Of a DNA stretch of 64,000 nucleotides, positions 11,356 through 64,000 are shown in pieces. The stretch's first letter is position 1. The number at the start of each line of letters is the position of its first letter. A program made the translations under genes and the position numbers. The DNA is from Styela clava. Lineage: Eukaryota. The DNA lies in contig NC_135255.1 in the NCBI RefSeq assembly GCF_964204865.1, positions 23,126,001 through 23,190,000 on the forward strand, written 5' to 3'. The notes below the pieces were generated by a model. The model saw only the letters and a list, made by a program, of their open reading frames with translations. It made no database searches and had not been told where the DNA came from.

Positions 11356-11362
11356 TATATAA
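11356..11362 (+). promoter_or_regulatory. Candidate TATA box (TATATAA); also at 27751, 44136, 63539
   Basis: Conserved in all four copies, ~240 bp upstream of the ATG. A putative 5'UTR intron gtatgt(11501)..ctcag(11565) lies between. Confidence 0.45.
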
Positions 11363-11593: not shown

Positions 11594-14251
11594 ATGATCA
11601 AATATATAACCCTGTTTATGCTTATTGGAATAATTTCCACGGAGAACGCATCGTCTTTGGATAATTATGGGACAGTACTGACCGAGCAAATGAATCGATA
11701 TTGCCAAACGTATATGTGTCAACATACCGACCATACATCGGTAAGACAACAGAGAGAGCCGCGGGTTGGAAAAGCTGGGCCAGAGGGCCCACCTGGACTA
11801 CCCGGAATAGTCGGTCCCCGTGGACCTGCTGGAAGCGTCGGTCCACAAGGGGTCAAAGGTCAGCCCGGGGTTTCTGGACCATCGGGTGAAGTGAACTACA
11901 CCAGGATCGTGGAGATAGTTGGGGAGAAAATAGGTAAGATTTTATTTGGTTTAAAGCACGTTCTCTGTGGCAAATAATCAATACGGTCACCCATATTACT
12001 AAGCCGTTGTGTTGTATTTTACTTAGAATAGTAGTAGCGTGTATGAATTATGTATTTATTATATCATTGAATAAAAAAAAAACATTCAACTTTAACTGGA
12101 TGAACTGGAATGTCTTAACTGGACTTAATCAGGATTCCAGGTCTATGACACCAAAACTAAGAACTTTCGCTGGTCGCGGAAAATATCCTATTTTTTATAT
12201 AACATGACGGTTGAGCCTGGGCGTTAAAAAATTTCACAAAAACCTATCAAGCCATTTCATTTCACATACCATTGTTGAATTGAAGCAAGAAAATTACAAA
12301 ACGTGAAAATTAATTTATTCTGTTAATTAATTAAATCCAGTGTTTTATTAAAAAAATTATTGAATTTCTTTGTAACATTTCAGGAAAGTATCTTCTTCCT
12401 AACAAAGATTGTAGCAACTTCGACACAAATGAAATGGCTTTGCTTCAGAACGAGACTGGCGGTGTGTTCGAAATCAATACGATCAAGCTGGAACATCGAC
12501 TCAGGGTTTATTGCGACGTAGAAACAGATGGAGGGAAATGGATGGTAAGAAGTGGTATTTTCCAGAATGTTTCGCAATTTTATTTCCATATTCTTTTTTC
12601 TAAATTGTTAAAACGAAGCTCGTGATCTATGTGGTAACTTCAGAGGGAAATTAGCATCCTGTTTGCAAGGGGTTTTATAACGCACGATTTTTTCATGCCG
12701 TCTAGCTTCGTATGTCTGAAGTCTCAGTTTGTATATTGGCAACATAATTTTCAATCAGAACGTTATATCATATGAATTTTTCACATTAATATGGCACCTC
12801 CGAACAATGTACCAAATAAGCTAATGAATTTATTTGTAGAGAACCTTAAATATTGCAATTGCATTCCATGACTGATATTACATGGGTGGGTTATATTTTT
12901 TTATATTTTCGGCCAACAGGTTTTCCAACGAAGGTCTAACGGAATGCTCGATTTCGCCTCGTATAACTGGAAAGATTATGTGGAGGGATTTGGAAACCCA
13001 AAATCTGAATATTGGATGGGTAAGAAAAATGATTGTTGGAAAGGATAGGCTTGTAAAAAGAAAACTTTCCGAGGAACTTCTAGTTCTTATCATTTATAAC
13101 GTAACCTGGTTAACATATCACCAAAAAACTGTTAAATCTGGCAACTAGATTCTATGATATATTCAAAATCTTACTAAATTAAAACGATTAGAATTGAATG
13201 TAACTTTACTCCATGTGTGATAGCATGAATTTAAACTATGCTGAAGTGCAAATATTCTTCCAAATATAGTCGCTTGCGAGTCTTGTCCAGAGTGAATTCG
13301 TGAAACACATAATAAAATACAAATAATTTACAATATTCTCAAATTTGTTAGGATTGGAGAAACTTCATCGATTAACATCAGACGGTGAATTTGAACTCAG
13401 AATTGATTTGGAAGATTGGGAGGGAAATAAACGCTACGCCAAGTATTCGTAAGTATTTCATCAATTATATTTTACCCGTTTTTTACAGCTGTGGGTATTG
13501 CGGACGGAGACTCCGGTTTCTGAATCGGAAACGACAATTTTTGATTGAAAAAGCTGAATCATTCGGAATACTTTTCATATTTAATTGGAAGAATTTGACT
13601 CCGACAAATTTGTTTATTATTTCAAATCCGACTTCTCATCTTCATTAATGAAAAGTTTTCTGGTCGATTAATAGCTTTGTTTATGAGATTGACCAAGTTG
13701 ACTGAATAAGACAAAACTAGGAAATTATCGATAGTCTCAAAACAGCCGCCTTCCTATTAGTAACACTTTGTTTAGATTCTTACAAATCCGGTCGAGCATT
13801 TCTCGCGGCCTGTATCATCATATAGGTGATGCAAAACTGATTTTTCGGGTTTCAGGACTGAATATGAAATTCTATATTAAAACGCATTATATCTATGTTG
13901 TTGAAATAATATTTTTATTTCAGGTCGTTTTCCATCGGATCCGCTTCTACAAAATATCAACTCAATGTTGGAGGATATTCAGGAAATGCTAGGGATTCAC
14001 TTACAGAGGGACATAACGGAATGAAGTTTTCGACAAAGGATCAGGACAATGATATGGATGGTGGCAACTGTGCAAGTCATTTTAACAGTGGTGGATGGTG
14101 GTTTAATAAATGCTTTGACTCAAGCCTCAACGGTAAATATATCAGTGGAGGTCAGACTAGTAGAGATGGTGAAGGAGTCATCTGGGTACATTGGAAGGGA
14201 AGCAGATACTCACTGAAGTTCACGGAAATGAAATTCCGTCCGAGAGTGTAA
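11594..14251 (+). CDS. Ficolin-like secreted lectin (collagen + fibrinogen-related domain), copy 1, ~341 aa, 5 coding exons
   Basis: Exons 11594-11933, 12384-12544, 12920-13019, 13352-13448 and 13924-14251, all with GT..AG introns in compatible phases (1,0,1,2). The 1026 nt join into one ORF. Signal peptide [15 protein letters not shown]; YCQTYMC; 14 GXY triplets (GKA..GEV); fibrinogen-domain motifs [70 protein letters not shown]. Confidence 0.93.
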
Positions 14252-24670: not shown

Positions 24671-24680
24671 GGAATTTCCC
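24671..24680 (-). promoter_or_regulatory. Consensus NF-kB/Rel site GGGAAATTCC; also at 41066-41075 and 61038-61047
   Basis: Exact match to GGGRNWYYCC on the minus strand, with near matches at 24929-24938 and 25141-25149. About 3 kb upstream of copies 2-4. Motif match only. Confidence 0.3.
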
Positions 24681-26325: not shown

Positions 26326-27988
26326 TGTCTGAGCGTTGCCCCGCTCATATTATATATACGCTTTGGTTCCGACCTGCTCCGACTCCAGACCTGGTTTAAA
26401 CCATCTATTTTTGGAACCTGATTTTTGAAAAGGCTCTAGACAAGCATAGGTAAAAATAGGTCAATCTAAACTGGTGGTTCTCAGCTTTTAAATTCATCAA
26501 TTTAAATTCATCCTTTTGCTTATTTTAAAACTTCCTATTACTCACTATTTAATGATAAAGCGGTACTCAAGAAGTATGTGAACCAAGATGGCGGACACCG
26601 GAACGTAGTATGTGTACCAGGTTAGGGTTAGGCCATAATTTCAGGTACAAATACTACGGGAGTCACTTGGCTAGTCTCCGAACTCGTCATTTAACTAAAA
26701 TAAGAATAATTAGAATAATATTATGGCATATCCCTAACCTGGTACACATATCCTGGTTCCGATGTCCGCCATGTAGGTTCACATACTTCGGGAGTGTCTA
26801 TGAAACTACCTATTTGTTCAATCTTTAATGGACCCAGCTACTGTTATGGGCAAGCCACACTGCCGCTGTTGTAAATTTCAAGTAGTCGTGAAAGTGTGCA
26901 TAAATTAATGTTGCCATACGCCAGATTTTCCCTGACATGTCCGGTATTTGAGTGGTCAATTTTGCGTCAGGGAGAAATGCTAAAAAGTGCCTAAATGTCA
27001 GATTTTGGAATACACAGAATTCCTGCTAGAAATTCTCGAGTTTCCAGATATTGCGCATCCACGAAAACCTATTTTTCAGAGATATGTCACATGCAAGCTT
27101 TTTTGTGCCACACGGATAGAGTCGCATTCAGATAATTGTGATGTCACATATGAACTGTATTACCAGCATTTTGTAATCGGTATTTTGGTTGCACAACCTT
27201 TAGCTTACTCCGTGCTAGGGTTTGGTCACTAGTGCTAAAGATTAGGCAACAATTTTGCTTCTTTCGTTTTTTCTGTATTTATTCTATTCTCACAAGAAAG
27301 CGACGACAGCTTGTGCCCTTGCATACATAGTGAATTTATACCATAATAGAAATCATTAATTTTGTGTTTTGTGAGATTTTGTGTTTCCACATATGGTAAC
27401 CCTAGCATGAATAATTAATTATATTATACTAAATAATAGTAATACTGCGCGTGTACAAGGCAAATCGCTTCCCTTCCCTTGGAAAGAATTCCTTCCCTGT
27501 TGGGAAACGTTTTTCTCGAGCAGTTAGAGGTGGACCACAATGCTAGGCGCGAAATTAATTTTAATTTTGATGGAAAACTCCTCGTTTTCCTAGTTTCATT
27601 TCTTTATACGGTGTTTTCACTTTGTTGAGCAGAAATTGTTCACACAAAATGAGATATGGTATCTACCAATCAAAATAACACTATAAATGCCACTGGAATA
27701 ATAAACAGAGGGCCATGAGTGCTAAAAGCCTCCAGACGGGGCCCACAAGCTATATAAGGTTGGGAACCACTTTTCTACGCAATGCATTAAAAAGGCTAGA
27801 CTCAGACTAGAAGCCAACAGTCATTCTTGATCCAAATCTAAAAGGCAGAACAAAGATGCAGCAGACTGTAATTAACCGGATTCCATTTGCGTGTTGTATG
27901 TGTTATCTACTGTGATTGTGTTGAGTAAGTTGTAACTTTAAAGTGTTTTATTCATCTCAGATTAATACGAGTATTATCGGAACTAACC

Positions 27989-30646
27989 ATGATCAAATAT
28001 ATAACCCTGTTTATGCTTATTGGAATAATTTCCACGGAGAACGCATCGTCTTTGGATAATTATGGGACAGTACTGACCGAGCAAATGAATCGATATTGCC
28101 AAACGTATATGTGTCAACATACCGACCATACATCGGTAAGACAACAGAGAGAGCCGCGGGTTGGAAAAGCTGGGCCAGAGGGCCCACCTGGACTACCCGG
28201 AATAGTCGGTCCCCGTGGACCTGCTGGAAGCGTCGGTCCACAAGGGGTCAAAGGTCAGCCCGGGGTTTCTGGACCATCGGGTGAAGTGAACTACACCAGG
28301 ATCGTGGAGATAGTTGGGGAGAAAATAGGTAAGATTTTATTTGGTTTAAAGCACGTTCTCTGTGGCAAATAATCAATACGGTCACCCATATTACTAAGCC
28401 GTTGTGTTGTATTTTACTTAGAATAGTAGTAGCGTGTATGAATTATGTATTTATTATATCATTGAATAAAAAAAAAACATTCAACTTTAACTGGATGAAC
28501 TGGAATGTCTTAACTGGACTTAATCAGGATTCCAGGTCTATGACACCAAAACTAAGAACTTTCGCTGGTCGCGGAAAATATCCTATTTTTTATATAACAT
28601 GACGGTTGAGCCTGGGCGTTAAAAAATTTCACAAAAACCTATCAAGCCATTTCATTTCACATACCATTGTTGAATTGAAGCAAGAAAATTACAAAACGTG
28701 AAAATTAATTTATTCTGTTAATTAATTAAATCCAGTGTTTTATTAAAAAAATTATTGAATTTCTTTGTAACATTTCAGGAAAGTATCTTCTTCCTAACAA
28801 AGATTGTAGCAACTTCGACACAAATGAAATGGCTTTGCTTCAGAACGAGACTGGCGGTGTGTTCGAAATCAATACGATCAAGCTGGAACATCGACTCAGG
28901 GTTTATTGCGACGTAGAAACAGATGGAGGGAAATGGATGGTAAGAAGTGGTATTTTCCAGAATGTTTCGCAATTTTATTTCCATATTCTTTTTTCTAAAT
29001 TGTTAAAACGAAGCTCGTGATCTATGTGGTAACTTCAGAGGGAAATTAGCATCCTGTTTGCAAGGGGTTTTATAACGCACGATTTTTTCATGCCGTCTAG
29101 CTTCGTATGTCTGAAGTCTCAGTTTGTATATTGGCAACATAATTTTCAATCAGAACGTTATATCATATGAATTTTTCACATTAATATGGCACCTCCGAAC
29201 AATGTACCAAATAAGCTAATGAATTTATTTGTAGAGAACCTTAAATATTGCAATTGCATTCCATGACTGATATTACATGGGTGGGTTATATTTTTTTATA
29301 TTTTCGGCCAACAGGTTTTCCAACGAAGGTCTAACGGAATGCTCGATTTCGCCTCGTATAACTGGAAAGATTATGTGGAGGGATTTGGAAACCCAAAATC
29401 TGAATATTGGATGGGTAAGAAAAATGATTGTTGGAAAGGATAGGCTTGTAAAAAGAAAACTTTCCGAGGAACTTCTAGTTCTTATCATTTATAACGTAAC
29501 CTGGTTAACATATCACCAAAAAACTGTTAAATCTGGCAACTAGATTCTATGATATATTCAAAATCTTACTAAATTAAAACGATTAGAATTGAATGTAACT
29601 TTACTCCATGTGTGATAGCATGAATTTAAACTATGCTGAAGTGCAAATATTCTTCCAAATATAGTCGCTTGCGAGTCTTGTCCAGAGTGAATTCGTGAAA
29701 CACATAATAAAATACAAATAATTTACAATATTCTCAAATTTGTTAGGATTGGAGAAACTTCATCGATTAACATCAGACGGTGAATTTGAACTCAGAATTG
29801 ATTTGGAAGATTGGGAGGGAAATAAACGCTACGCCAAGTATTCGTAAGTATTTCATCAATTATATTTTACCCGTTTTTTACAGCTGTGGGTATTGCGGAC
29901 GGAGACTCCGGTTTCTGAATCGGAAACGACAATTTTTGATTGAAAAAGCTGAATCATTCGGAATACTTTTCATATTTAATTGGAAGAATTTGACTCCGAC
30001 AAATTTGTTTATTATTTCAAATCCGACTTCTCATCTTCATTAATGAAAAGTTTTCTGGTCGATTAATAGCTTTGTTTATGAGATTGACCAAGTTGACTGA
30101 ATAAGACAAAACTAGGAAATTATCGATAGTCTCAAAACAGCCGCCTTCCTATTAGTAACACTTTGTTTAGATTCTTACAAATCCGGTCGAGCATTTCTCG
30201 CGGCCTGTATCATCATATAGGTGATGCAAAACTGATTTTTCGGGTTTCAGGACTGAATATGAAATTCTATATTAAAACGCATTATATCTATGTTGTTGAA
30301 ATAATATTTTTATTTCAGGTCGTTTTCCATCGGATCCGCTTCTACAAAATATCAACTCAATGTTGGAGGATATTCAGGAAATGCTAGGGATTCACTTACA
30401 GAGGGACATAACGGAATGAAGTTTTCGACAAAGGATCAGGACAATGATATGGATGGTGGCAACTGTGCAAGTCATTTTAACAGTGGTGGATGGTGGTTTA
30501 ATAAATGCTTTGACTCAAGCCTCAACGGTAAATATATCAGTGGAGGTCAGACTAGTAGAGATGGTGAAGGAGTCATCTGGGTACATTGGAAGGGAAGCAG
30601 ATACTCACTGAAGTTCACGGAAATGAAATTCCGTCCGAGAGTGTAA
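27989..30646 (+). CDS. Ficolin-like secreted lectin, copy 2 (appears identical to copy 1)
   Basis: Exons 27989-28328, 28779-28939, 29315-29414, 29747-29843, 30319-30646. Same sequence as copy 1 at +16,395. Confidence 0.9.
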
Positions 30647-33600: not shown

Positions 33601-33681
33601 ACGGCATCAGGTCGGCCAGAATAAATTACCCAACTAGTAGGATTTGGCCCGCGGCCCGTAGTTTGCCCATGTAATCAGTAA

Positions 33682-36004: not shown

Positions 36005-39000
36005 ATGTGTTAGAGTAGGGACGGGCAAACACGACCCGGGGGCCGGATCCGTCCCCCGCCATATGTTTAACTCGTCTTATTGACTTGTCTCTCCTCTGAG
36101 TAAATCTGACAATCTTCACCCCCTTTCCCGGCTTCACAGCACTCAACCAGTAAACATTGCAGAAATATCAACTTGCCACTTGCGTGGACGATTTTTAATC
36201 TTAACCCATCGGTTCCCAAACCTTTTCTGTCACATTCCTCTCTTGGCCTATTTTTAAGCTCCTAATTCCTTTAACAATACAGATACAAACTCTATTAAAA
36301 TTTGTTACACAATATTCGACGCAACGTTTGTACATTTTGAATAGTTCATAATGTATGCATATATTATTTTCTTTAGAGGCTCTTAGGATATTGATTTAAC
36401 AACGATTATTTTATTCGACGTTTTGTTCAGTTTCAGGAGCCAGTGCTCTGTAATGAGCTTATATAATTTGGAATTTTCTACGGGCTGTTTGAGATTGTTT
36501 TTTTGCGTGCGATGACGTCATCCAAATTAAAAATTGCCCATCTTGTTGCGGTTCCGTGTTCGCTGTTATCAGTTGCTCAGGCAAAGTTGTGAAGATTGAA
36601 AGATTTTTTATGATGACATATTCGTTCTATTTCGTTTTGGTCGTGTCTGTATATTTTACCATTGCTCACTTGTTTCTATCATTATTGGTTTCTGGTGTAG
36701 GGATTTGTTCGGCGTCAAACGCGGGCACTCCCGTAGTATGTGTACCAGTTTAGTGTTAGGCCATAATTTTATTCCGATTTTTCCTATTTTAGTTCTATTA
36801 CGAGTTCGAGGACTGTCTGTGTTAGTCAAGTGAATATACCCCTGTCCATAGGTTTCATTTTCTTTACACAACTTGTTGTAAAATGAACGAACAAAGTAAG
36901 TTACTTCCATATTGGTACACATACTTCTGGAGCACCCAAACGCGTGTAAAAACGTGCTATAAAGCAAACACCAGTTGTTCTATTTACTTACATATAACAG
37001 TCAACTTTCTGAAAATTGCAACTCGCACTATGAGATCAAAAGCAAATGATCAAGTTTTGGCAACAACTTGGCACGCGTTTATGAAATTAGGACTTTCCCA
37101 ATGTAGCAAAAATTGTTCCAGACAGAATTAGTCAATAGCTGTGTAAATTTAAGGTCAATACTAGAAAAAATATTTAATATCAGATAATTAAAGCGAACAA
37201 CGTAGCAGACGACTGTTACATTTTGTTTCATAAATCGATTATTACATAACAATTTGGAGTTTTAGATGATAATGAAAACACAATTAAAATATTTTTTTGC
37301 TGTCATCGAAACTAGTTTAATGCTCGCAGACGTATAACAAAGTGTTTTCTGGTTTTCATTTGTCAGCTCGAGTTGATTGAACAGTTTAATCTTTTATAGG
37401 GTTAGTATGGGCTTGCAGATAAACCATCAAAGTTATGTTTTGTAGTTTGAGTTATTAGAACATATTGAAAGTTCATGGGCTTAGCAAAAAATAGGTAAAT
37501 TTTTTAACTTAGAGCTTTGTATACGTTGCTTTCATTAAACATTTTTCTCGGACACCGAAAAGTGCAAGCAGACGCTAATTTGAATATAGAAAATGTGGAA
37601 TGTTCTTGAGCTCCTCTTTCCACAACTTTTACATGGAACAACATCTGTTACCGATGTGCGATATCTTGCGATACTTGTAAGTGAAGGAGCAAAAGTTATG
37701 TATTTTGGTTGTTATTTGTCAACGCCAGTTGATAGAACAGTTTGAACGTTTATATCGGTATTGCAAGAGATGTAATATGTAATAATTTCAGCTTTGAGAT
37801 TTTGGTACAAAAATTGTTTTATGTAATTGGCTATCTTGCAGACGCGCCTCCGAAGTAACGTATTTTGTATATAATTTGTCTATTTCAGTTAACACGTTTA
37901 GTAAATTAATCAAAAAATATGAAACATATAACAGTTTTAGCTTGGAGCTTCTTATACATCCATTTTTCACACATTTCCCTTCGAACAAGTAGCGTATTCT
38001 GGGTATTGTTTGTTTGCAATAAAAAATGACAATTGTAATATATGACAATTTTAGCTTTTGGTGGGACGTTTTTTAATGTCTTCCACCCAGAAGAAAGTGA
38101 TTCCCTCGATTTGCGAAGAGCTACTCTACTCACAAAATTTGTTCTGGTTTTTATTTGTACTGTACAAGAACTCTACTGGTTATGTAATAAGCTACCTTAT
38201 AGAAGCGCTATTATCGAAATGCTTAATAGTTTTTTTTTCTATTCGTCTTCTAGTTAACAGTGGAAGCGTAAGATATGCAATATACAATAATATTTATAGC
38301 TGTTAGTTTTTATCTTTTTTTCTATATGACAATTTTCCAGGATTTTCACTCAAAACAAGGCCCTATACGGGCTTTCACTAATATGCAAACGAATACCATG
38401 TAGACGCGCCATAAATGAAATACCTTTTCGGTATATTTAATAATTTCAACTTAGAATTCCAACTTAAAAACTTTCACTAGTTCTCGTTGCTAGAATTTTG
38501 TGATAACTTTGTGTGATTTTCTATGTATGGAACTTTATTCAAATGGTTTAGACTCTAAACTTTAGAGTGAGCATATGAAGTGGGATTCATGGTGAGTTAG
38601 GATTCACATATTTCTCCCGGGGAGAGGAAAGCCGATAAGACGGCTTAACCATATGGAGAACCACGGCCTCTCGTCCTGTTACCAGTCCATGTTGGGTATG
38701 GGATTAGTTTTAGGTATTTGTTTTTCGGAAGCATGGCGTTGCGGCTCAATGTTGTTGTCGCTAGAATGCTATTGATTTTATTAATTTCAGAAACTTTCTG
38801 AGGGTTCTATGTTTCCACATTTTCTGTTATCTGGTGTTCAGGCAAAGTCATGAAGATTGAAAGTTTGTCCATACATCTACTGTGACAGATTACATATCCG
38901 TTCTATTTCTTTTTGGATTTTGTTGCTCACCTGTTTTCATAGTTTATATCATTATTGGTCTCTGGTGTAGAGCTTTGTTCGGCGTCGAACGCGGGTACTC

Positions 39001-42000
39001 CCGTAGTATGTGTACCAGGTTGGGATTAGGCCATAATTTTATTCTGATTTTTGTATTTTATTTCTATCAAGAGTTCGGGGACTGTCTGTGTTAGCCAAGT
39101 GAATACACCCCCTACCCATAGGCTTCCTTTAAACAACTTGATGTAAAGTAGGCGAACAAAATTAGTTACCTCCATTTTGGTACACGTACTTCTGAAGCGC
39201 CCAAACACGTGTGAAAATCGTTCTATAGAGCAAAAAAAAACAGTTGTTCCATTTACTTGCATATAACAGTCAACCTTCTGAAAATTGCAACTCGCACAAT
39301 GAGATCAAAAGCATGTGACAACTTGGCACGAGTTTATGAAATTAGGCCTTCCACCATGAAGCTATTGTTTCAGACACAATTAATCAATAGCTGTGTAGGA
39401 CCAGTAAATTTAAGGTCACTACTACAAAAATATATTTTAGTATTAGATGATTAAAGCGAACAACACAGCAGACGACTATCACATTTTGTTTCATACATCG
39501 ATTATTAAATAATAGTTGAAAATTTTAGAAGATGATGACAAGACAATTAAAAAAGTTATTGCTGTCATCGAAACTAGTTTAACGTTAGCAGAAGTTTAAC
39601 AAAGTTTATTCTGGTTTTTATTTTTCAGGTCAAATTAGTTTAACAGTTTTATCTTTTATAGGGTTAGCATAGGCTTGCAAATAAACCATCAAATGTATAC
39701 AATTAGTTTGGGTTATTAGAACAGATTGTAAGTTCGTGGGCTCAGGTCAAAATATGCAAATTTAATAATTTAACTCAGATCTCTGTATACGTAGTTTCTT
39801 TATATCCTTTGTCTGAGAGAACGCACTGTACAAACCACTGATTTGAAAAGTTGCTTACTATTTACTTACATATAACAGTAAACTTTCTGAAAATTACAAC
39901 ACGCACTATGAGATCAAAAGCAAGTGATCACGTTCAGGCAACAACTTGGCATGAGTTTATGAAATTAGGACTTTTCGGATTTAGCAAAAATTGTTCCAGA
40001 CATAATTAATCAATTGCTGTTGAGAATTTAAAGTCACAACAAGTCAAAACAAAATAGGATATTGAATGCGTTATAAAAGTGCGCTACGATGCGCCACACC
40101 GCCGAGTCAAGAATAGGGTACTCCTGTAGTATATGCACCTGGTTAGAGTTAGGCCGTAATTTTATTCTGATTTTCTATAATTTAGTTCTATTACGAGTTA
40201 CGGGGACTGTCTGTGTTAGCCAAGAGGATATACCCCCTGCTTATAGGTTTCAGTCCCTTTACACTACTTGATGTAAAGTAGGCGAACAAAATTAGTTATT
40301 GGTACACATACTTCTGGAGCACCAAATAATGTTGGAAAACTATTCAACAGTAACTACCGATACACTTCTGGAGCGCCGAGAATATAATCCATGGTTCCCC
40401 ATATGATTAGGTCAAATTCATTGGCTTTTACAAGAATGACTGTGAATAATCTAAACCTATCACAGTATTGATATTACAACTCCAGAACTCCATTACACAA
40501 AAAAGATAGACAGATAGTTTATTTTGAAAACCCCATAATATAGGCCTACACTGATTCAAATGAAGAATTTTGAAAGGCGAACAAAACCTTTGAAAAAGTT
40601 GTGTCAAAATAAAATTATACTTATTGTCGCGGTATAAGATCTTGCTGCTGTGGTTGCAAATATGTCAGAAGACCAAAAGATTTCAGATTGGTTATTTATT
40701 GTACGGCAACTTCACAATCTAAAACTTGAAACAGCAAAAACAGAGCACACAACGAAACGCAACCCACCTCCAGACCAACGGCCGGAGAACGAGAACAAGA
40801 GATATATTTTCTCTCGCACGTGTAATTGGGTGGTCGCAGTCCAGACCCGGTCAAAACTGCCCAAATTAGGTCTGGTATAGTTTAGTATCACAAGTACTTC
40901 CAGTATTCCGCACGGTGGACATTTTTGAAATTTTAATATGTGTTTCATGAATCTCTATAAAAGATACGGTCTCAATGATTCGGGTGAGAAAAAATTATTT
41001 CTTACATAAATTACGCTTTAACTCAGTTAAATTGAGAATGCCTTAAATTTTTCCTTAAATCTGGTGGAATTTCCCTACTTTCCGCACGGTGAAATGTTTT
41101 AAAATTGTAGTATATATTTTACATATGTCCACCAAAAATACTGTGTTGATGGATTGGATGAGAAAGAATTATTTCTTGCATAAATTAAGCTTCAACTAAA
41201 TTGACGACTTTGTCGATAAATAAGGGCAAATTTATATCTATCTATTCATTTTAACGAAAAAAATGTAGGTTTCAATCATTCTCTGTATTATTATGTTTCT
41301 TCTTACTTTTGATTCCTAAAAAGGGGAATTGCCTCATTAATTCCACCCATTTTGTCGCAATTAACTATTGCGTATTTAAGAATGGTTGCGTTTATGGTTC
41401 AATGCATAGTAATTCTATTCATACTTCGTGGACAAATTTATTTGAGCAAACTTGCATAAAATAATTTTAACGTGGAAATATCTCGAACATCATGAGGTGG
41501 AGTTCTTTATTTTCATGGTTCATGGTTCAATGCATGGGAATTCCATTCATAGGTCGTGGGGCTTTGGTTCACACGCAATGAGGAGCTGAGATATCGAGTT
41601 GTTGAATTGTGAACAAATCACTCGTTATTTATTCGTGTCGTATTTTGCCCACGACTCTCTCTCTCTTTTATCTTTTAGAGATTATATCGCATAAAATGTG
41701 GCGCAACTTCAATCTCATTCATATTTCGCTTTGTCAGTGTCTGATGATAAAATAATTTTAGTTCAGTGTAGTTGTAGTGATAGGTGGGTTAGATTGGCAG
41801 TTTTTGATGTTATTGGAATTGAGGTTGCATTTCTAAATTAACCTAAGTCGGTTAGATTCGATATTTTAAGAAGATCATTTTGAACATTTTGCCATATCAA
41901 AATTTAATGATTTATAGTTGCTATATAGATTTTAAAAATTAGATTGTTTGGAGCTGAAACCAATATAATTAGTCACGGCTTCTGGTTTCGACCAACGGCC

Positions 42001-44373
42001 GGCAACCAACTTGCTTAATGGTAAATAAGTTCATGGACGCCATCTTGTGCCATATTTGGGAAACGCGAAACAATGGAGTCTTATGGGAAATTTTCGTCGT
42101 GTTGTTGTACCGAATCGAATAAGTCCGCTGTTATAAGGGCTAGAATGAAACTGAAGGGTGGATTTTGAACTTTAAGATATATGCTATCTAAATATATAAC
42201 GCAGATTTTATAGTGATACGCCAATTTGAGGCTGTAAAATGTCTCCGCAACAATCAATCCTACAATGTCATTTGTTCTTCTAGCGCATGGCTGAGCAATA
42301 GGGCATTATGGAGCTTGACAGACGAAAAATGTTAACCAGAAAATAGAAACGGCCATTGAAGCAAAGTTGGGTCGGCCGGAAATTTGACGAATAAACACAA
42401 CTTTTCATCTGTGACATCATAAGGAAAGCCTTTGTCATATTGTTAATAATAACGATTAGAATGACTAATTTACTTCGGAAGCAACTCGGAACCGGTATAC
42501 TTGTCTTCAAAGACAATTTAATGTACTAAAAATGTAATTTGGCCAACATGAAAGAATATAAGCATGTAAGGCTAAGATTCTACTTCAAAATACGACCTTG
42601 AAAATTTTTCTACCTAAAATATTAGTGAAAATAATAGGTATGTTTCAATAATTGTGTTGGAACTTTTCATAAGGCGCCGTGTTGAATTGTCGAGAACATT
42701 AGGCACAAGATGGCGTCCATTGTCTGAGCGTTGCCCCGCTCATATTATATATACGCTTTGGTTCCGACCTGCTCCGACTCCAGACCTGGTTTAAACCATC
42801 TATTTTTGGAACCTGATTTTTGAAAAGGCTCTAGACAAGCATAGGTAAAAATAGGTCAATCTAAACTGGTGGTTCTCAGCTTTTAAATTCATCAATTTAA
42901 ATTCATCCTTTTGCTTATTTTAAAACTTCCTATTACTCACTATTTAATGATAAAGCGGTACTCAAGAAGTATGTGAACCAAGATGGCGGACACCGGAACG
43001 TAGTATGTGTACCAGGTTAGGGTTAGGCCATAATTTCAGGTACAAATACTACGGGAGTCACTTGGCTAGTCTCCGAACTCGTCATATAACTAAAATAAGA
43101 ATAATTGGAATAATATTATGGCATATCCCTAACCTGGTACACATATCCTGGTTCCGATGTCCGCCATGTAGGTTCACATACTTCGGGAGTGTCTATGAAA
43201 CCACCTATTTGTTCAATCTTTAATGGACCCAGCTACTGTTATGGGCAAGCCACACTACCGCTGTTGTAAATTTCAAGTAGTCGTGAAAGTGTGCATAAAT
43301 TAATGTTGCCATACGCCAGATTTTCCCTGACATGTCCGGTATTTGAGTGGTCAATTTTGCGTCAGGGAGAAATGCTAAAAAGTGCCTAAATGTCAGAATT
43401 TGGAATACACAGAATTCCTGCTACAAATCCTCGAGTTTCCAGATATTGCGCATCCACGAAAACCTATTTTTCAGAGATATGTCACATGCAAGCTTTTTTG
43501 TGCCACACGGATAGAGTCGCATTCAGATAATTGTGATGTCACATATGAACTGTATTACCAGCATTTTGTAATCGGTATTTTGGTTGCACAACCTTTAGCT
43601 TACTCCGTGCTAGGGTTTGGTCACTAGTGCTAAAGATTAGGCAACAATTTTGCTTCTTTCGTTTTTTCTGTATTTATTCTATTCTCACAAGAAAGCGACG
43701 ATAGCTTGTGCCCTTGCATACATAGTGAATTTATACCATAATAGAAATCATTAATTTTGTCAGAGATTTTGTGTTTCCACATATGGTAACCCTAGCATGA
43801 ATAATTAATTATATTATACTAAATAATAGTAATACTGCGCGTGTACAAGGCAAATCGCTTCCCTTCCCTTGGAAAGAATTCCTTCCCTGTTGGGAAACGT
43901 TTTTCTCGAGCAGTTAGAGGTGGACCACAATGCTAGGCGCGAAATTAATTTTAATTTTGATGGAAAACTCCTCGTTTTCCTAGTTTCATTTCTTTATACG
44001 GTGTTTTCACTTTGTTGAGCAGAAATTGTTCACACAAAATGAGATATGGTACCAATCAAAATAACACTATAAATACCACTGGAATGATAAACAGAGGGCC
44101 AGAGTGCTAAAAGCCTCCAGACGGGGCCCACAAGCTATATAAGGTTGGGAACCACTTTTCTACGCAATGCATTAAAAAGGCTAGACTCAGACTAGAAGCC
44201 AACAGTCATTCTTGATCCAAATCTAAAAGGCAGAACAAAGATGCAGCAGACTGTAATTAACCGGATTCCATTTGCGTGTTGTATGTGTTATCTACTGTGA
44301 TTATGTTGAGTAAGTTGTAATTTCAAAGTGTTTTATTCATCTCAGATTAATACGAGTATTATCGGAACTAACC

Positions 44374-47275
44374 ATGATCAAATATATCACCCTGTTTATA
44401 CTTGTTGGAATAAGTTCCACGGAGAACGCATCGTCTTTGGATAATTATGGGACAGTACTGACCGAGCAAATGAATCGATATTGCCAAACGTATATGTGTC
44501 AAGATACCGACCATACATCGGCAAGACAACAGAGAGGGCCGCTGGTTGGAAAAGCTGGGCCAAAGGGCCCAACTGGACCACCCGGAATAGCCGGTCCACG
44601 TGGACCAGCTGGAAGCGTCGGTCCTCGAGGGGTCAAAGGTCAGCCCGGGGTTTCTGGGCCATCGGGCGAAGTGAACTACACCAGAATCGAAGAGATTGTA
44701 GAAGAAAAATTAAACAGTAAGTGAGTGCCACCATTATACTACAAGCTGAATGCAAACAAAATTTTCAACATCATTTGTCATCATTTATGTGTCACTTCTT
44801 ACAATCGTACATTCACTTTGTATGCGAACACTCACTCGCTGACAACAGTTTCATCCTTGGTTTATAATGTACAGTTACAGATGTTTAGACTAGTTATTAT
44901 ATATTAGCAAAAATAATATAGAATAAATTTTTTCAATAACGATGTCTTGATGACACATAATTATTCCAATCACGGAATAGATATTTATTTATTTATTATT
45001 GCTGTTTACAATGAACAAACCACTGGTCCAATTGCTCCCCAATCCCCATTATTAAAAAGATGAGGTTTCTAATAATAGCTTTTAAATATGTTCATATATT
45101 TTTGCCTCTAATTTTCCTGGATGGAAATGAACAACTTTTTTGCCTGTCAAATTCTACTTTGCTTTTGTCCTAATTCATTGCCAACTGATTGATTCATTTA
45201 ATTTCATCAGGTATGTTCTCGCTGGTGCTTAACAAAGACTGCAGCAACTTTGCCACAACAGAGTTAGCTCTGGTAAAGAACGAAACAGGCGGCGTCTTTG
45301 CAATCTATCCAGTAAGATGGAACCAAATAATTCAGGTTTATTGCGACACATCGACAGACGGAGGAAAATGGATAGTGATAAATTTCGTCATTAATATACA
45401 AGATTACAATGATTTATGATGCACTTGTGATCCTGTATTGTCTGGATCATTTTGGGCAAACTGCAGTTATGACTCACTCAGATACAACCAGATATCATTC
45501 GAATAAAATCAATTGATACACAAAAATTTCTGTCTGGCATTCATCTGGCTGAGTGAATAGATTGTACGTAATATAAACCGCAACATATCCTTTGATTTTG
45601 CAATGCTATTTTGTACTTTGAACATTTTAAACGCACTTTAAAATAAGGCTTCACAACAAAGACAAAAAACAGTATTTATAATTTAAGTGCATAATCGCTT
45701 AATAGATATGGAGAACCACAGCCTGCAGAGTGACGTTTTTTACCAGCTGAGGTCAGATATAGAAATAGTAAATTGTAATATGCGCGTGTACTTCTTCACC
45801 AAAACAGGTCGAATATTGGCTGCGTATACCGACTAGATGGTCCAGCACGATGCACCATTATTAAGTGCCGTAGACAAGCGACTTTATATTATTCTTTGCA
45901 GGGCATTAACAGACGAATATATAATTTTTGAACATATATTTTCTGCAAATAGGTTTTCCAACGAAGGTCCAACGGAATGCTTGATTTCGCCTCGTATAAC
46001 TGGATTGAATACGTGGAAGGATTTGGAAATCCAGCGAACGAATATTGGATGGGTAAGATAGATGATTGTTAAAAAGAATAGGCTTGTAAAAAAAAACTTT
46101 CAAGAAGCTTTTAGTTGTTTATCATTTATAAAGTTCCATAATTACCATATCACCAGAAAACTGGTAATTCTGGCAACGGGATTCTATGATATATTTTTCG
46201 AAAGCAAAGCTAACTAAAATGAAAATATTGACTTTAATCTATGCGTAATAGCTTGGGTGTAAACTATGCTGAAGTGCAAATATTCTCCCAAATATAGTCG
46301 CTTGTGAATCTTGAAGTGAAGCAACTAATCAAATAAAATAATTTACAATGTTCTCAAATTTGTTAGGATTGGAGAAACTACATCGATTAACATCAGACGG
46401 TGACTTTGAACTCAGAATTGATTTGGAAGATTGGGAGGGAAATAAACGCTACGCCAAGTATTCGTAAGTATTTCATCAATTATATTTTACCCGTTTTTTA
46501 CAGCTGTGGGTATTGCGGACGGAGATTCCGGCTTCTGATTCGGAAACGACAATTTTTGATTAAAAAACCTGAATCATTCGGAATACTTTTCATATTTAAT
46601 TGGAAGAATTTGACTCTGGCAACTTGTTTATTATTTCAAATCCGACTTCCTATCTTTACTTTGTGCTTAATGAAAAATTTTCTAGTCGATTAATAGCTTT
46701 GATTATGGGATTTACCAAGTTGACTGAATAAGACAAAACTAGGAAATTATCGATCGTCTCAAAACAGCCGCCTTCCTATTAGTAACACTTTGTTTAGATT
46801 CTTACAAATCCGGTCGAGCATTTCTAACGGCCTGTATCATCATATAGGTGATGCAAAACTGATTTTTCGGGTTTCAGGACTGAATATGAGATTCTATAAT
46901 AAAACGCATTATATCTATGTTGTTGAAATAATATTCTCTTATTTCAGGTCGTTTTCCATCGGATCTGCTTCTACAAAATATCAACTCAATGTTGGAGGAT
47001 ATTCAGGAAATGCTGGGGATTCACTTGATTATCATAACGCAATGAAGTTTACGACGAGGGATCAGGACAACGATGAAAAGTCTGGTGGCAACTGTGCAAG
47101 TGAATATAACAGTGGTGGATGGTGGTTTTATAGTTGCCATCACTCAACCCTCAACGGTAAATATATCAGTGGAGGTCAGACTAGTAGAAGCTGGGAAGGA
47201 GTCATCTGGAACCATTGGAGGGGAAGCAGTCACTCACTGAAGTTCACAGAAATGAAATTCCGTCCGAGAATGTAA
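44374..47275 (+). CDS. Ficolin-like secreted lectin, copy 3 (diverged paralog), ~343 aa
   Basis: Exons 44374-44716, 45211-45374, 45953-46052, 46367-46463, 46948-47275; 1032 nt in frame with the same intron phases as copy 1. The exon-2 donor is a weak GTGATA. C-terminus ...GNAGDSLDYHNAMKFTTRDQDND...GGWWFYSCHHSTLNG...EMKFRPRM. Confidence 0.9.
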
Positions 47276-48237
47276 AGATGTTCAACCATCAATCAAAACC
47301 AAAGCCGTGGAGTTAGAGTCGTTGGTTCAAAAATTTCTAAATCGTTGTTGCAATTTTAAACTGAAACCCTAAATACAATATCAAACTTATCCTGCAAAAA
47401 GTTGTTTTCCCAATTTCTTCAAGTCAAAATACAAAATTCCAAATTTTACCAGGTACTTATTTGAAGTCAGTATTTGAAGTCGAAATTTTCCAAGTTCGTA
47501 ATCTCAAATTTTTCTCATTTTGATAATATACTCGGATTCTGAACTCGGTTTCTTCAATATCTCGAACCACGTGATTTCCACAGCCTTTGGTAAAATGTAA
47601 ATATATTTTCATTTCACAAAATCAACATTTAAATGACTTTTCACCTAATCAACCGAGATAGAGTTTTCATTTTTAATACATTAATATAACAAATATCTGA
47701 ACTAACCATTTCGTCAATATTCTAAATATCCGTTTAATCTTGTATAAATACATGTAAAATTATATTCTGTTTGACATCTTTGAATGGTAAAATTTGAACA
47801 AAATAATTGTTTCATGCAAATGTCTTAAAACTTTCATTAAATCTAATAATTTCGTTGTTTTGAATTAATTCAAGATTTTACAAATGTACATAATAATTTT
47901 TAATCATTTAATTCTTGATAGCATGCTTAGATGTCGATAAATCATGCATTAGACAACAGGCTTGTTATTGTATTTGGGTTGGAGAACGGCAGGACAGCTG
48001 ATTGCGAGCGCCATTGATGTTTGTAAATTTTACAAATGTACTTTTGTGGGAATGGTCGTTTGCGAGAATGATACTTTGATGAAAGTCATTTTGCGAGAAT
48101 AAAGTCTGTAGGAAACGACTTTTTTCAAATAATGCAGTTTTGCGAGAACGAGATTTTACAAGGGCGAGGTGTTTTGACAGAAATAAATTTATGAGATTAA
48201 ACGTTACCGCAAATGTAGTTCCAAATTTAAATGGGCT

Positions 48238-62809: not shown

Positions 62810-64000
62810 AGCATAGTTAAAAATAGGTCAATCTAAACTGGTGGTTCTCAGCTTTTAAATTCATCAATTTAAATTCATCCTTTTGCTTATTTTAAAACTT
62901 CCTATTGCTCACTATTTAATGATAAAGCGGTACTCAAGAAGTATGTAAACCAATATGGCGGTCACCGGAACGTAGTATGTGTACCAGGTTAGAGTTAGGC
63001 CATAATTTCAGGTACAAATACTACGGGAGTCACTTGGCTAGTCTCCGAACTCGTCATATAACTAAAATAAGAATAATTGGAATAATATTATGGCATATCC
63101 CTAACCTGGTACACATATCCTGGTTCCGATGTCCGCCATGTAGGTTCACATACTTCGGGAGTGTCTATGAAACTACCTATTTGTTCAATCTTTAATGGAC
63201 CCAGCTACTGTTATGGGCAAGCCACACTACCGCTGTTGTAAATTTCAAATAGTCGTGAAAGTGTGCATAAATTAATGTTGCCATACGCCAGATTTTTCCT
63301 GACATGTCCGGGATTTTAGTGAACCACAATGCTAGGCGCGAAATTGATTTTAATTTTGATGGAAAACTCCTCGTTTTCCTAGTTTCATTTCTTTATACGG
63401 AGTTTTCACTTTGTTGAGCAGAAATTGTTCACACAAAATGAGATATGGTATCTACCAATCAAAATAACACTATAAATGCCACTGGAATGATAAACAGAGG
63501 GCCAGAGTGCTAAAAGCCTCTAGACGGGGCCCGCAAGCTATATAAGGTTGGGAACCACTTTTCTACGCAATGCATTAAAAAGGCTAGACTCAGACTAGAA
63601 GCCAACAGTCATTCTTGATCCAAATCTAAAAGGCAGAACAAAGATGCAGCAGACTGTAATTAACCGGATTCCATTTGCGTGTTGTATGTGTTATCTACTG
63701 TGATTGTGTTAAGTAAGTTGTAATTTTAAAGTGTTTTATTCATCTCAGATTAATACGAGTATTATCGGAACGAACCATGATCAAATATATAACCCTGTTT
63801 ATGCTTATTGGAATAATTTCCACGGAGAACGCATCGTCTTTGGATAATTATGGGACAGTACTGACCGAGCAAATGAATCGATATTGCCAAACGTATATGT
63901 GTCAAGATACCGACCATACATTGGCAAGACAACAGAGAGGGCCGCTGGTTGGAAAAGCTGGGCCAAAGGGCCCAACTGGACCACCCGGAATAGCCGGTCC
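62810..64000. repeat. Tandem unit 4 (partial)
   Basis: Same unit start and promoter, with a ~578 bp deletion at ~63322 relative to unit 1. Confidence 0.9.
63777..64000 (+). CDS. Ficolin-like gene copy 4, 5' part of coding exon 1 (runs off the window)
   Basis: ATG at 63777; reads [74 protein letters not shown], open to the window end. Not in the supplied ORF track. Confidence 0.85.
   Translation, partial: MIKYITLFMLIGIISTENASSLDNYGTVLTEQMNRYCQTYMCQDTDHTLARQQRGPLVGKAGPKGPTGPPGIAG

What the first reader, a model, noticed from the sequence alone, without database searches (positions are those of the whole stretch)
47010..47275. Ligand-binding P-subdomain differs almost only by non-synonymous changes between paralogs
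Seen: in the last exon, copy 1 vs copy 3 shows about 22 amino-acid-changing codons and two compensating 1-codon indels, but only about 4 purely synonymous codons (hand count). Examples: TEGH/DYH, DMD/DEKS, HF/EY, NKCFDS/YSCHHS, DG/SW, V/N, RY/SH. The adjacent intron 4 is closely alignable, and exon 4 differs by one residue. The Ca2+ motif DQDND, both Cys and GGWWF are kept. Known: the residues around WW-x-x-x-C-H form the acetyl-group (S1) site of ficolins and tachylectin-5. Copy 3 keeps C-H; copies 1/2 have C-F. Inference: positive selection producing different ligand specificity.
Basis: partly seen in the sequence, partly recalled or inferred. Interest (0 to 1): 0.8.

Follow-up and report, generated by a model that had tools for sequence, protein, structure and literature searches.

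The report
Ficolin-like lectin array, hypervariable pocket
The window holds a tandem array of ficolin-like lectin genes (collagen stalk plus fibrinogen-type head) whose copies share a near-identical scaffold but differ by amino-acid changes at the residues lining the sugar-binding pocket, a familiar pattern for immune lectin families that is unusually clear here.

Summary
In the last exon, copy 1 (13924-14251) and copy 3 (46948-47275) differ at 22 replacement codons, two 1-codon indels and 4 synonymous codons.

That count alone does not show selection. About 80% of sites are non-synonymous, pairwise dN/dS is 1.13, and Fisher p is 0.5.

Six further paralogs outside the window support the inference:
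- Site models reject neutrality (2dlnL about 55; about 22% of codons at omega about 7).
- The result holds on three sub-segments, each with its own tree.
- It is absent in exon 1 of the same genes.

A tree-free count used pocket residues taken beforehand from the FIBCD1 crystal structure. It gives 0.78 replacement changes per site. Synonymous sites give 0.23, and intron and flank give 0.19-0.33.

The genes are also recombination mosaics. dS between copies 1 and 3 runs 0.16, about 2, 0.58, 0.06 and 0.11 across exons 1-5. That explains the closely alignable intron 4.

None of the 8 copies compared keeps the full canonical acetyl pocket, because Tyr431/Ala432 became the variable pair.

Verdict: diversifying selection on the pocket of an expressed ficolin-like subfamily, on a background of gene conversion. 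Ligand differences are untested. This is a known kind of phenomenon. Earlier scan notes list other ficolin-like loci in this genome, but not this result.

The parts
44374..44716 (+). Copy 3 exon 1: signal peptide, Cys-containing N-terminal segment and 13 G-X-Y collagen triplets. It ends in phase 1.
   Evidence: Pfam Collagen E = 1.2e-7, 31.8 bits. The GT..AG joint 44716|45211 appears in a contig of a run guessed to be RNA.
45211..45374 (+). Copy 3 exon 2: start of the fibrinogen-related domain, 'type A' cassette.
   Evidence: Pfam PF00147 profile positions 3-44. Only 59% amino-acid identity and dS about 2 against copy 1.
45953..46052 (+). Copy 3 exon 3.
   Evidence: PF00147 positions 45-77. 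AG/GT borders.
46367..46463 (+). Copy 3 exon 4, nearly invariant across all paralogs.
   Evidence: PF00147 positions 80-109. 94-100% nucleotide identity among all copies. The exon 4 to exon 5 junction is seen in contigs of a run guessed to be RNA.
46948..47275 (+). Copy 3 exon 5 (last): rest of the B subdomain, the P subdomain and the stop codon.
   Evidence: PF00147 positions 111-221, E = 3.6e-32. Best solved relative is FIBCD1 4m7f, E = 7e-27.
47027..47032 (+). Hypervariable patch 1 (DY). Residue 28 is equivalent to FIBCD1 Lys381 / TL5A Arg186.
   Evidence: P(omega>1) = 1.00 at residue 28. Mapping and PMC3908420.
47060..47074 (+). Ca2+-site motif DQDND, conserved.
   Evidence: D38, D40 and D42 are invariant in 25 paralogs.
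47075..47089 (+). Hypervariable patch 2 (EKSGG), the loop after the Ca2+ site. It includes the Glu398 equivalent and the 1-codon indel.
   Evidence: Residues 45 and 47 have P > 0.98.
47102..47107 (+). Hypervariable patch 3 (EY). Residue 53 is equivalent to Tyr405, a pocket-wall residue.
   Evidence: Residue 52 has P = 1.00 and residue 53 has P = 0.88. The states seen are Y, F and W.
47129..47149 (+). Hypervariable patch 4 (YSCHHST) around the invariant Cys63 (Cys414 equivalent). It includes the Asn413 and His415 equivalents.
   Evidence: Residues 62 and 65 have P > 0.95. Position 64 is H, F or Y.
47189..47194 (+). Hypervariable patch 5 (SW). It takes the place of the canonical Tyr431-Ala432 pair.
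   Evidence: Both residues have P = 0.999. More distant paralogs of the same genome have (Y/F)-A here.
47210..47212 (+). Hypervariable site 88 (N; V, Y or G in other copies).
   Evidence: P = 1.00.
47225..47233 (+). Hypervariable patch 7 (SSH). Residue 93 is equivalent to Trp443, which is Tyr in TL5A and the ficolins.
   Evidence: Residues 93-95 have P > 0.98.
11594..11933 (+). Copy 1 exon 1.
   Evidence: tblastn hit and splice sites.
12384..12544 (+). Copy 1 exon 2, 'type B' cassette.
12920..13019 (+). Copy 1 exon 3.
13352..13448 (+). Copy 1 exon 4.
13924..14251 (+). Copy 1 exon 5. Its pocket patches are [19 protein letters not shown] and SRY.
   Evidence: The CDS sums to 1026 nt, in frame.
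27989..30646 (+). Copy 2, identical to copy 1 over the whole gene and offset by +16395.
   Evidence: 0 differences over 3.1 kb. The repeat units 10048-28311 and 26443-44696 are 99.74% identical.
63777..64000 (+). Copy 4 exon 1, cut by the window end. The rest of the gene is in L031.

Best explanation
The window is part of a tandem array of at least nine five-exon genes, in repeat units of about 14-19 kb. Each encodes a secreted ficolin-like lectin with a signal peptide, a short collagen stalk and a fibrinogen-related domain (FReD).

Two processes act together on this array. First, unequal crossing-over and gene conversion create new copies and exchange segments. The genes are therefore mosaics, and the scaffold stays nearly uniform: exon 4, intron 4, the start of exon 5 and the framework codons of exon 5, including their synonymous sites. 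Second, diversifying (positive) selection favours amino-acid replacements at about 13-25 codons of the P subdomain. These fall in seven short patches. The patches coincide with residues that line the S1 ligand pocket and its rim in FIBCD1, tachylectin-5A and the ficolins.

Shown here: the architecture, the mosaic structure, the clustering of changes at pocket-equivalent positions, and a replacement rate at those positions 2.4-4 times every local neutral yardstick.

Inferred: the paralogs bind different ligands. Those ligands may not be acetyl groups, because the canonical Tyr-Ala of the acetyl pocket is lost in this subfamily. The array would thus broaden innate recognition.
For: Architecture:
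- Pfam Collagen matches exon 1, and PF00147 is tiled at profile positions 3-221 by exons 2-5.
- All borders are AG/GT, and the CDS is 1026 or 1032 nt, in frame.
- Contigs of runs guessed to be RNA cover exons only. They bridge exon 1 to exon 2 and exon 4 to exon 5.

Array and mosaic structure:
- More than 150 FReD last-exon matches occur in the genome, and nine close copies sit at C6:23.14-23.31 Mb.
- Segment identities differ sharply within each pair.
- dS between copies 1 and 3 across exons 1-5 is 0.16, about 2, 0.58, 0.06 and 0.11.
- 76 of 120 pairs of informative sites are incompatible, and the minimum number of recombination events (Rm) in exon 5 is at least 8.
- The three sub-segments of exon 5 give different trees.

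Selection:
- M0 omega is 1.01.
- M1a/M2a, M7/M8 and M8a/M8 give 2dlnL of 54.5-55.2, with 22% of codons at omega 6.9.
- With only the six cluster copies, 2dlnL is 42.7.
- Each of three sub-segments on its own tree is significant, with p = 0.0013, 0.00016 and 5e-6.
- The exon 1 control gives omega 0.54 and 2dlnL 2.7, not significant.

A-priori pocket residues from PMC3908420, mapped through the 4m7f alignment:
- 5 of 10 pocket positions are among the 13 sites with P > 0.95, against 8 of 98 other positions, p = 0.002.
- A tree-free count of minimum changes gives 0.78 per site for replacements in pocket codons and their immediate neighbours.
- The same count gives 0.23 for synonymous sites (p = 1e-9) and 0.10 for replacements elsewhere.
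- Intron 4 gives 0.19, intron 3 gives 0.27 and the 3' flank gives 0.33.
- Framework synonymous sites interleaved between the patches give 0.22, p = 5e-6.

Contrast with other paralogs: more distant paralogs in the same genome keep the canonical pocket residues at exactly these positions.
Against: - Whole-exon pairwise omega is only about 1 and is not significant.
- Only eight sequences from one assembly were used, one of them partial.
- Some 'paralogs' could be alleles placed in tandem.
- Site-model likelihood-ratio tests are known to be inflated by recombination, which is clearly present. Partitioning and the tree-free count reduce that problem but do not remove it.
- The codon-model code is my own (F3x4 codon frequencies, naive empirical Bayes site posteriors), not PAML or HyPhy.
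- The +-1 widening of the pocket set was chosen after seeing the data. The core set of 10 gives the same result (omega about 3.6, p = 1e-7).
- In the pair copy 3 versus p7, synonymous divergence in the exon also exceeds the flanks (p = 0.04). This hints at sequence import or a locally raised mutation rate.
- No binding data exist.
- The pocket mapping is by sequence alignment only. The exon-5 fragment folded poorly (pLDDT 44).
Confidence: 0.66

Rival explanations
1. Retained or imported old divergence. Gene conversion repeatedly homogenises the framework and flanks, which erases dS. The patches would then be older sequence that escaped homogenisation or was copied in from more divergent paralogs. 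On this reading omega > 1 is an artefact of a lowered dS, not of accelerated replacement.
For: - The mosaic structure is strong.
- The minimum number of recombination events (Rm) is at least 8, and the sub-segments of exon 5 give different trees.
- A 4-nt block (ATG GAT) plus the 3' flank is shared by p4 and p8 only.
- In copy 3 versus p7 the exon is more diverged than both flanks, even at synonymous sites.
Against: - Patches and framework with invariant synonymous sites alternate every 10-30 nt. That is far shorter than usual conversion tracts.
- Replacement change in the patches (0.78 per site) also exceeds intron 3, intron 4 and the 3' flank (0.19-0.33).
- Private variants of copies 1 and 3 have essentially no 14-mer donor in the 19 next-closest paralog loci. 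The one match is at a synonymous framework codon of copy 1.
- Those more distant paralogs carry the conserved canonical residues at these positions, so they could not supply the observed variety.
- Many columns have 4-5 amino-acid states, which shuffling alone cannot create.
Confidence: 0.17
2. Relaxed constraint only. The variable patches are surface loops free to drift at omega about 1, the scaffold is under purifying selection, and there is no adaptive diversification.
For: Whole-exon omega is 1.0-1.2. The raw 22:4 count fits neutrality. The canonical acetyl-pocket residues are lost, which could reflect decay of the site.
Against: - M1a and M8a, which model exactly this situation, are rejected with 2dlnL of about 55. 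They are rejected again in each sub-segment.
- Pocket replacement rates are 3.4 times synonymous rates and 2.4-4 times non-coding rates.
- The genes are intact, and transcripts of this gene family are present in runs guessed to be RNA.
- The Ca2+ site, the disulfide cysteines and the cis-peptide context are strictly kept.
Confidence: 0.12
3. A locally raised mutation input at the hot spots, such as targeted deamination or templated micro-conversion, possibly somatic. Selection on replacements would not be needed.
For: Many hot-spot codons differ by 2-3 nucleotides. The incompatibilities show no spatial structure. Synonymous divergence is slightly raised in the exon for copy 3 versus p7.
Against: Synonymous change per site inside the pocket codons (0.28-0.33) does not differ clearly from that outside (0.21-0.22). 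No read-level evidence of somatic variants was obtained. The one variant at 47138 can be explained by cross-mapping of p4/p5 contigs.
Confidence: 0.05

Closest known systems
Ascidian and vertebrate ficolins (Halocynthia roretzi ficolins; human FCN1-3). 54 ficolin genes are reported as expanded in Styela clava (PMC7540406; review PMC5465252).
   Same: Signal peptide, N-terminal Cys segment, collagen-like G-X-Y stalk and C-terminal FReD. Ca2+ site, the Cys pair flanking the pocket, and GGWW(F/Y). The stalk starts with a GKAGP motif that has Lys in the X position.
   Different: The canonical acetyl pocket is incomplete, because the Tyr431/Ala432 and Trp/Tyr443 equivalents are hypervariable. There is a one-residue insertion (NSGGWWF against KGAWWY). 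Lectin activity, MASP binding and complement activation are untested. The species name comes from earlier scan notes and was not verified here.
FIBCD1 (PDB 4m7f), the best solved relative, and tachylectin-5A (1jc9).
   Same: E = 7e-27 over the whole of exon 5, roughly 45% identity by eye. Same Ca2+ loop, same disulfide, and the same positions forming S1.
   Different: FIBCD1 is a transmembrane tetramer without collagen. Its S1 residues (Tyr405, His415, Tyr431, Ala432, Trp443) are conserved, whereas here those positions are the variable ones.
Expanded invertebrate FREP/FBN families, including reported positively selected sites in Anopheles FBN8 (PMC2811201) and the Biomphalaria FREPs (PMC7588048).
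   Same: Large lineage-specific FReD expansions in tandem clusters, immune-recognition role proposed, and high diversity.
   Different: Snail FREPs carry IgSF domains and mosquito FBNs lack collagen. Here the stalk is collagen, and the selected sites are pinned to pocket-equivalent residues among germline paralogs.
Birth-and-death gene families in which conversion and binding-site diversification act together (MHC peptide-binding region, plant NLR LRRs).
   Same: A homogenised framework, hypervariable ligand-contact residues with omega > 1, and reticulate sharing of variant patches.
   Different: An unrelated fold. The evidence here comes from paralogs of one genome, not from population samples.

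Membership tests
Ficolin (collagen + fibrinogen-related domain lectin) | C-terminal fibrinogen-related domain | tested here: met
   PF00147 is matched exon by exon, covering profile positions 3-44, 45-77, 80-109 and 111-221. Exon 5 gives E = 3.6e-32.
Ficolin (collagen + fibrinogen-related domain lectin) | Collagen-like G-X-Y region N-terminal to the FReD | tested here: met
   Pfam Collagen scores 31.8 bits against a cut-off of 27.2, E = 1.2e-7, in exon 1 of copies 1 and 3. There are 13 G-X-Y triplets, and 9 more in p8.
Ficolin (collagen + fibrinogen-related domain lectin) | Secretion signal and N-terminal Cys segment for oligomerisation | tested here: inconclusive
   A hydrophobic N-terminus MIKYITLF(I/M)L(V/I)GI and two Cys (YCQTYMCQ) can be read in exon 1. 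No signal-peptide predictor was available.
Ficolin (collagen + fibrinogen-related domain lectin) | Ca2+ site (Asp-x-Asp loop) and the disulfide linking it to the pocket (Cys401-Cys414 in FIBCD1) | tested here: met
   D38, D40, D42, C49 and C63 are invariant in 25 paralogs. They align to D391/D393/D395, C401 and C414.
Acetyl-group-binding FReD lectins (S1 site of TL5A, M-ficolin, FIBCD1) | Canonical S1 pocket residues Tyr405, His415, Tyr431, Ala432 and Trp/Tyr443 (FIBCD1 numbering) | tested here: not met
   Copy 3 has Y, H, S, W, S at these positions and copy 1 has F, F, D, G, S. None of the 8 copies compared (7 cluster sequences plus o1) has Tyr at position 431, and only p8 has Ala at 432. More distant paralogs in the same genome do keep (Y/F)ADG and CH.
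Lectin-pathway recognition molecule | MASP-docking Lys in the collagen stalk (Gly-Lys-Xaa-Gly-Pro) and complement activation | not testable with these tools
   A GKAGP motif can be read at the start of the collagen region. The motif's meaning rests on my own knowledge, and binding is untested.
Gene under site-specific positive selection | A site class with omega > 1 that significantly improves fit, robust to recombination, and located at functional residues | tested here: met
   2dlnL is about 55. Per-segment trees give p from 1e-3 to 5e-6. The exon 1 control is not significant. The tree-free ratio is 3.4. Enrichment at a-priori pocket sites gives p = 0.002. Caveats: 8 sequences, my own code, one assembly.
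Biomphalaria-type FREP | N-terminal IgSF domain(s) upstream of the FReD | tested here: not met
   Exon 1 matches Collagen only. No other coding exon lies between exon 1 and the FReD exons.

The most novel reading that the evidence does not exclude
The array may work as a germline 'patch-shuffling' system. Very short exchanges between tandem ficolin-like genes would recombine seven independently variable pocket patches. The result would be a combinatorial repertoire of binding pockets in a tunicate, on a scaffold that has abandoned the ancestral acetyl pocket. The extreme four-gamete incompatibility without spatial structure fits this idea. So do the segment-specific trees, and the excess divergence confined to the exon between near-identical flanks.
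Probability: 0.2. Interest if true: 0.7.

Novelty: new member of a known kind. Interest (0 to 1): 0.4.

Why it matters
Tunicates are the closest invertebrate relatives of vertebrates and rely on innate recognition. Ficolins are candidate starters of their lectin complement pathway.

This locus gives a concrete, testable set of natural pocket variants on one scaffold: the eight copies compared carry eight different pocket compositions. It also shows which residues to swap in binding studies.

The locus is also a caution about method. A striking excess of replacement changes between two paralogs can be exactly neutral. A well-conserved neighbouring intron can mislead as a yardstick when the genes are conversion mosaics.

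Tried and rejected
- **Pairwise test.** Whole-exon Nei-Gojobori with a Fisher test on copy 1 versus copy 3 gives omega 1.13 and p = 0.5.
- **Single gene tree.** The exon 5 tree has bootstrap support of only 20-59%. I therefore added per-segment trees and a tree-free count.
- **Spatial test of incompatibilities.** A PHI-like permutation test gave p = 0.7, so no breakpoints could be localised from exon 5 alone.
- **Donor search.** I looked for 12- and 14-mers carrying private variants in the 19 next-closest paralog loci. For copies 1 and 3, none was found at any replacement variant. Only 19 of more than 150 family members were screened.
- **Structure prediction.** AlphaFold2 on the exon 5 fragment with a 25-row alignment gave pLDDT 44, which is unusable, so no fold search was run.
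- **bioRxiv 2022.09.07.507018.** It has no ficolin or fibrinogen content.
- **PMC2429915.** It has no selection analysis.
- **Pseudogene or assembly artefact for copies 1 and 3.** Rejected, because the frames are intact, the splice sites are canonical and spliced contigs exist.
Full report
**What is at the coordinates.**
The region 47010-47275 is the larger part of the last exon (46948-47275) of a five-exon gene on the + strand. I call this gene copy 3. Its exons are 44374-44716, 45211-45374, 45953-46052, 46367-46463 and 46948-47275. All borders are AG/GT and the CDS is 1032 nt, in frame.

Exon 1 encodes a hydrophobic N-terminus, a short Cys-containing segment and 13 G-X-Y triplets. It matches Pfam Collagen at 31.8 bits. 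Exons 2-5 tile the Pfam Fibrinogen_C profile from position 3 to 221 without overlap. This is the ficolin layout.

I never typed, searched or folded a joined protein.

**The array.**
Copy 1 (exon 5 at 13924-14251) and copy 2 (+16395) lie in two 16.4-kb units that are 99.74% identical. The units are identical across the whole gene. A fourth copy starts at 63777.

A six-frame search of the assembly (377 Mb) found more than 150 FReD last-exon matches. Further close copies of this subfamily lie just downstream of the window on the same contig. I call them p4, p5, p6, p7, p8 and p9, and they sit at intervals of 14-44 kb. There is also one copy 14 Mb away (o1) and a fragment on a small contig (u1).

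p4 lacks exon 3 and p6 has a frameshift in exon 5. The other copies look intact.

Contigs of public runs guessed to be RNA lie on exons only. They bridge the exon 1 to exon 2 junction (44716|45211, GT..AG) and the exon 4 to exon 5 junction, so genes of this type are transcribed. Which copy is expressed cannot be told from contigs.

Earlier notes of this scan name the genome as the sea squirt Styela clava. I did not verify that. A published S. clava genome paper reports 54 ficolin genes as an expanded family (PMC7540406).

**The observation.**
All listed examples are present, and DQDND, both Cys and GGWWF are conserved.

The count is not evidence of selection by itself. This AT-rich exon has 257.5 non-synonymous and 63.5 synonymous sites, so 85% replacements is what neutrality predicts (binomial p = 0.39). 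Nei-Gojobori gives pN 0.118, pS 0.105, omega 1.13 and Fisher p = 0.5.

What is unusual is the contrast with the rest of the gene. Exons 1-4 have omega of 0.38, 0.13, 0.15 and 0.24.

**The genes are mosaics.**
Between copies 1 and 3, identity changes stepwise along the gene:

| Segment | Identity or divergence |
|---|---|
| 5' flank and exon 1 | 92-99% |
| Intron 1, exon 2, intron 2 | barely alignable; exon 2 has 59% amino-acid identity and dS about 2 |
| Exon 3 and intron 3 | 88-92% (exon 3 dS 0.58) |
| Exon 4 and intron 4 | 96-98% (exon 4 dS 0.06) |
| Exon 5 | 90% (dS 0.11) |
| 3' flank | 85-88% |

Other pairs show other breakpoints:
- p5 and p7 are 99.7-100% identical from exon 1 to exon 4, then 96.9% in intron 4, 94.7% in exon 5 and 88% in the first 150 nt of the 3' flank.
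- p4 has the 5' half of copy 3 and the 3' end of p5.
- p4/p5 share the 3' end of exon 5 and the 3' flank with p8.

Within exon 5, 76 of 120 pairs of informative sites fail the four-gamete test. The minimum number of recombination events (Rm) is at least 8. Three sub-segments of the exon give three different trees.

**Is there selection?**
Across eight sequences the variable residues fall at the same seven places in every copy:
- after DSL
- after DND
- CAS-xx-NSGGWWF
- WWF-xx-C-xx-S
- TSR-xx-EG
- IW-x-HW
- KG-xxx-SL

Many columns have four or five amino-acid states and 2-3 nucleotide differences per codon. The codons between the patches are nearly invariant, even at synonymous sites.

I wrote a Goldman-Yang-type codon likelihood program using F3x4 codon frequencies, with branch lengths optimised for each model. 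The results are as follows.

| Test | Result |
|---|---|
| M0, exon 5, 8 sequences | omega 1.01 |
| M1a vs M2a | 2dlnL 54.8 |
| M7 vs M8 | 2dlnL 55.2 |
| M8a vs M8 | 2dlnL 54.5 |
| Selected class under M2a | 22% of codons at omega 6.9 |
| Six cluster copies only | 2dlnL 42.7 |
| Exon 1 of the same genes (control) | omega 0.54, 2dlnL 2.7, not significant |

Recombination inflates such tests, so I made two further checks.

First, I split exon 5 into three parts, each with its own tree. Each part is significant on its own, with p = 0.0013, 0.00016 and 5e-6.

Second, I made a tree-free count that lets every codon column have its own history. It takes the minimum spanning tree over the distinct codons in each column. 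In the six cluster copies it gives these changes per site:

| Class of site | Changes per site |
|---|---|
| Replacement, pocket codons and their immediate neighbours | 0.78 |
| Replacement, elsewhere in exon 5 | 0.10 |
| Synonymous, whole exon | 0.23 |
| Synonymous, framework between the patches | 0.22 |
| Intron 4 | 0.19 |
| Intron 3 | 0.27 |
| 3' flank | 0.33 |

**Are the sites at the pocket?**
I took the ligand-contact list from the FIBCD1 crystal-structure paper before looking at site posteriors. The list is Lys381 (equivalent to TL5A Arg186), Glu398, Tyr405, Asn413, Cys414, His415, Tyr431, Ala432 and Trp443 (PMC3908420).

I mapped these through the HMMER alignment of exon 5 to chain 4m7f_A. 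Its numbering reproduces every residue named in the paper.

Five of the ten mapped positions are among the 13 codons with P(omega>1) > 0.95, against 8 of 98 other codons (Fisher p = 0.002). Most of the remaining selected codons are immediate neighbours of mapped positions.

Outside those codons pN is 0.057.

An alignment with 18 more distant FReD last exons of the same genome adds a clear contrast. Most of those genes keep the canonical KGAWWY..CH..(S/T)(Y/F)ADG..YYSL residues. This subfamily instead has NSGGWWF..C(H/F/Y)x..TSR-xx-EG..KG-xxx-SL. Its hypervariable 'xx' sits exactly where Tyr431-Ala432 should be.

None of the eight copies compared therefore has a complete acetyl pocket.

**Mechanism and rivals.**
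I think the most likely account (about 0.66) has two parts. Unequal crossing-over and gene conversion make and mix copies and keep the scaffold uniform. Selection favours new amino acids at the pocket lining, so the array encodes lectins with different pockets.

The main rival (about 0.17) is that conversion has erased dS and the patches are retained or imported old sequence. Four points argue against it:
- Patches alternate with synonymously invariant framework every 10-30 nt.
- Patch replacement rates exceed the non-coding rates.
- Private variants have no donors in the 19 nearest other paralogs.
- Those paralogs are conserved at exactly these positions.

One observation is not fully explained. 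Between copy 3 and p7 the flanks differ by 0.95%, but the exon between them has pN 5.4% (p = 1.5e-4) and also pS 4.8% (3 of 62 sites, p = 0.04).

Pure relaxation (about 0.12) is what M1a and M8a model, and both are rejected. Hot-spot mutation or somatic change (about 0.05) has no positive support.

**Limits.**
- Only eight sequences from one assembly were used.
- The codon code is my own and uses naive empirical Bayes posteriors.
- The pocket mapping is by sequence only. The exon 5 fragment alone folded poorly (pLDDT 44), and the full spliced domain was not folded, by rule.
- The widening of the pocket set to immediate neighbours was chosen after seeing the data. The core set of ten gives the same answer (omega about 3.6, p = 1e-7).
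- No binding data exist.

**Comparison with what is known, and novelty.**
Ficolin and FReD expansions, and high diversity in invertebrate FReD lectins, are established. Examples include:
- positively selected sites in Anopheles FBN8 (PMC2811201)
- the ficolin expansion in S. clava (PMC7540406)
- ascidian ficolins placed in the lectin pathway (PMC5465252)

This locus is a new, clean member of that kind. It is a derived collagen-stalked subfamily in which the ancestral acetyl-pocket residues have become the variable positions. A specialist would find it useful rather than surprising, so I score interest at 0.4.

The most novel reading not excluded is combinatorial shuffling of pocket patches by very short exchanges. 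I put its probability at about 0.2.

Noticed in passing
window 63777-64000 and L031:1778-3995: Copy 4 (p4) has no exon 3, with only 321 nt between exon 2 and exon 4. Splicing exon 2 to exon 4 would shift the frame. It is also a chimera. Exon 1, intron 1 and exon 2 are 98.5-99.4% identical to copy 3. Intron 4 is 99.6% identical to p5, and exon 5 and the 3' flank are identical to p5.
   Followed up: partly
L033:3702-4014: Paralog p6 has a frameshift inside exon 5 but is otherwise 99.7-100% identical to p5. It is probably a very young pseudogene.
   Followed up: no
window 46369-46461 vs L037:3009-3101: The 93 in-frame nucleotides of exon 4 are 100% identical between copy 3 and the copy 14 Mb away (o1). 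The flanking introns are only 71-78% identical, and exon 5 dS between the two is about 0.35. This points to a very short conversion tract or to constraint at the nucleotide level.
   Followed up: partly
window 46464-47425 vs L034: Copy 3 and p7 differ at 3 of 484 sites in intron 4 and at 3 of 150 sites in the 3' flank. The exon between them differs at 14 replacement and 3 synonymous positions plus one codon indel. The exon is thus more diverged than both flanks, even at synonymous sites (p = 0.04).
   Followed up: partly
window 44545-44570 (copy 3) and 11765-11790 (copy 1): The collagen stalk opens with V-G-K-A-G-P, with Lys in the X position followed by Gly-Pro. This resembles the MASP-docking motif of ficolins and MBL. 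That comparison rests on my own knowledge and on a lead from earlier scan notes, and it is untested.
   Followed up: no
L035:1683-2105: Paralog p8 has a collagen region 27 residues (nine G-X-Y triplets) longer than the other copies.
   Followed up: no
L010, L011, L014-L018, L022, L023, L026, L027, L029 (last exons): More distant FReD genes of the same genome keep the canonical acetyl-pocket residues (KGAWWY, CH, (S/T)(Y/F)ADG, YYSL). The genome therefore holds both conserved-pocket and variable-pocket ficolin-like subfamilies.
   Followed up: partly
window 47138: In the DNA run X1 a contig carries C>T here (His64 to Tyr, the His415-equivalent position) at about half the summed depth. p4/p5 carry TAT at this codon, so cross-mapping of short paralog contigs is the simplest reading. 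An allele is the less likely alternative.
   Followed up: no
window 10048-44696: Two 16,395-bp units are 99.74% identical overall and identical across the whole gene. Whether they are a true very recent duplication or two haplotypes placed in tandem was not tested.
   Followed up: no
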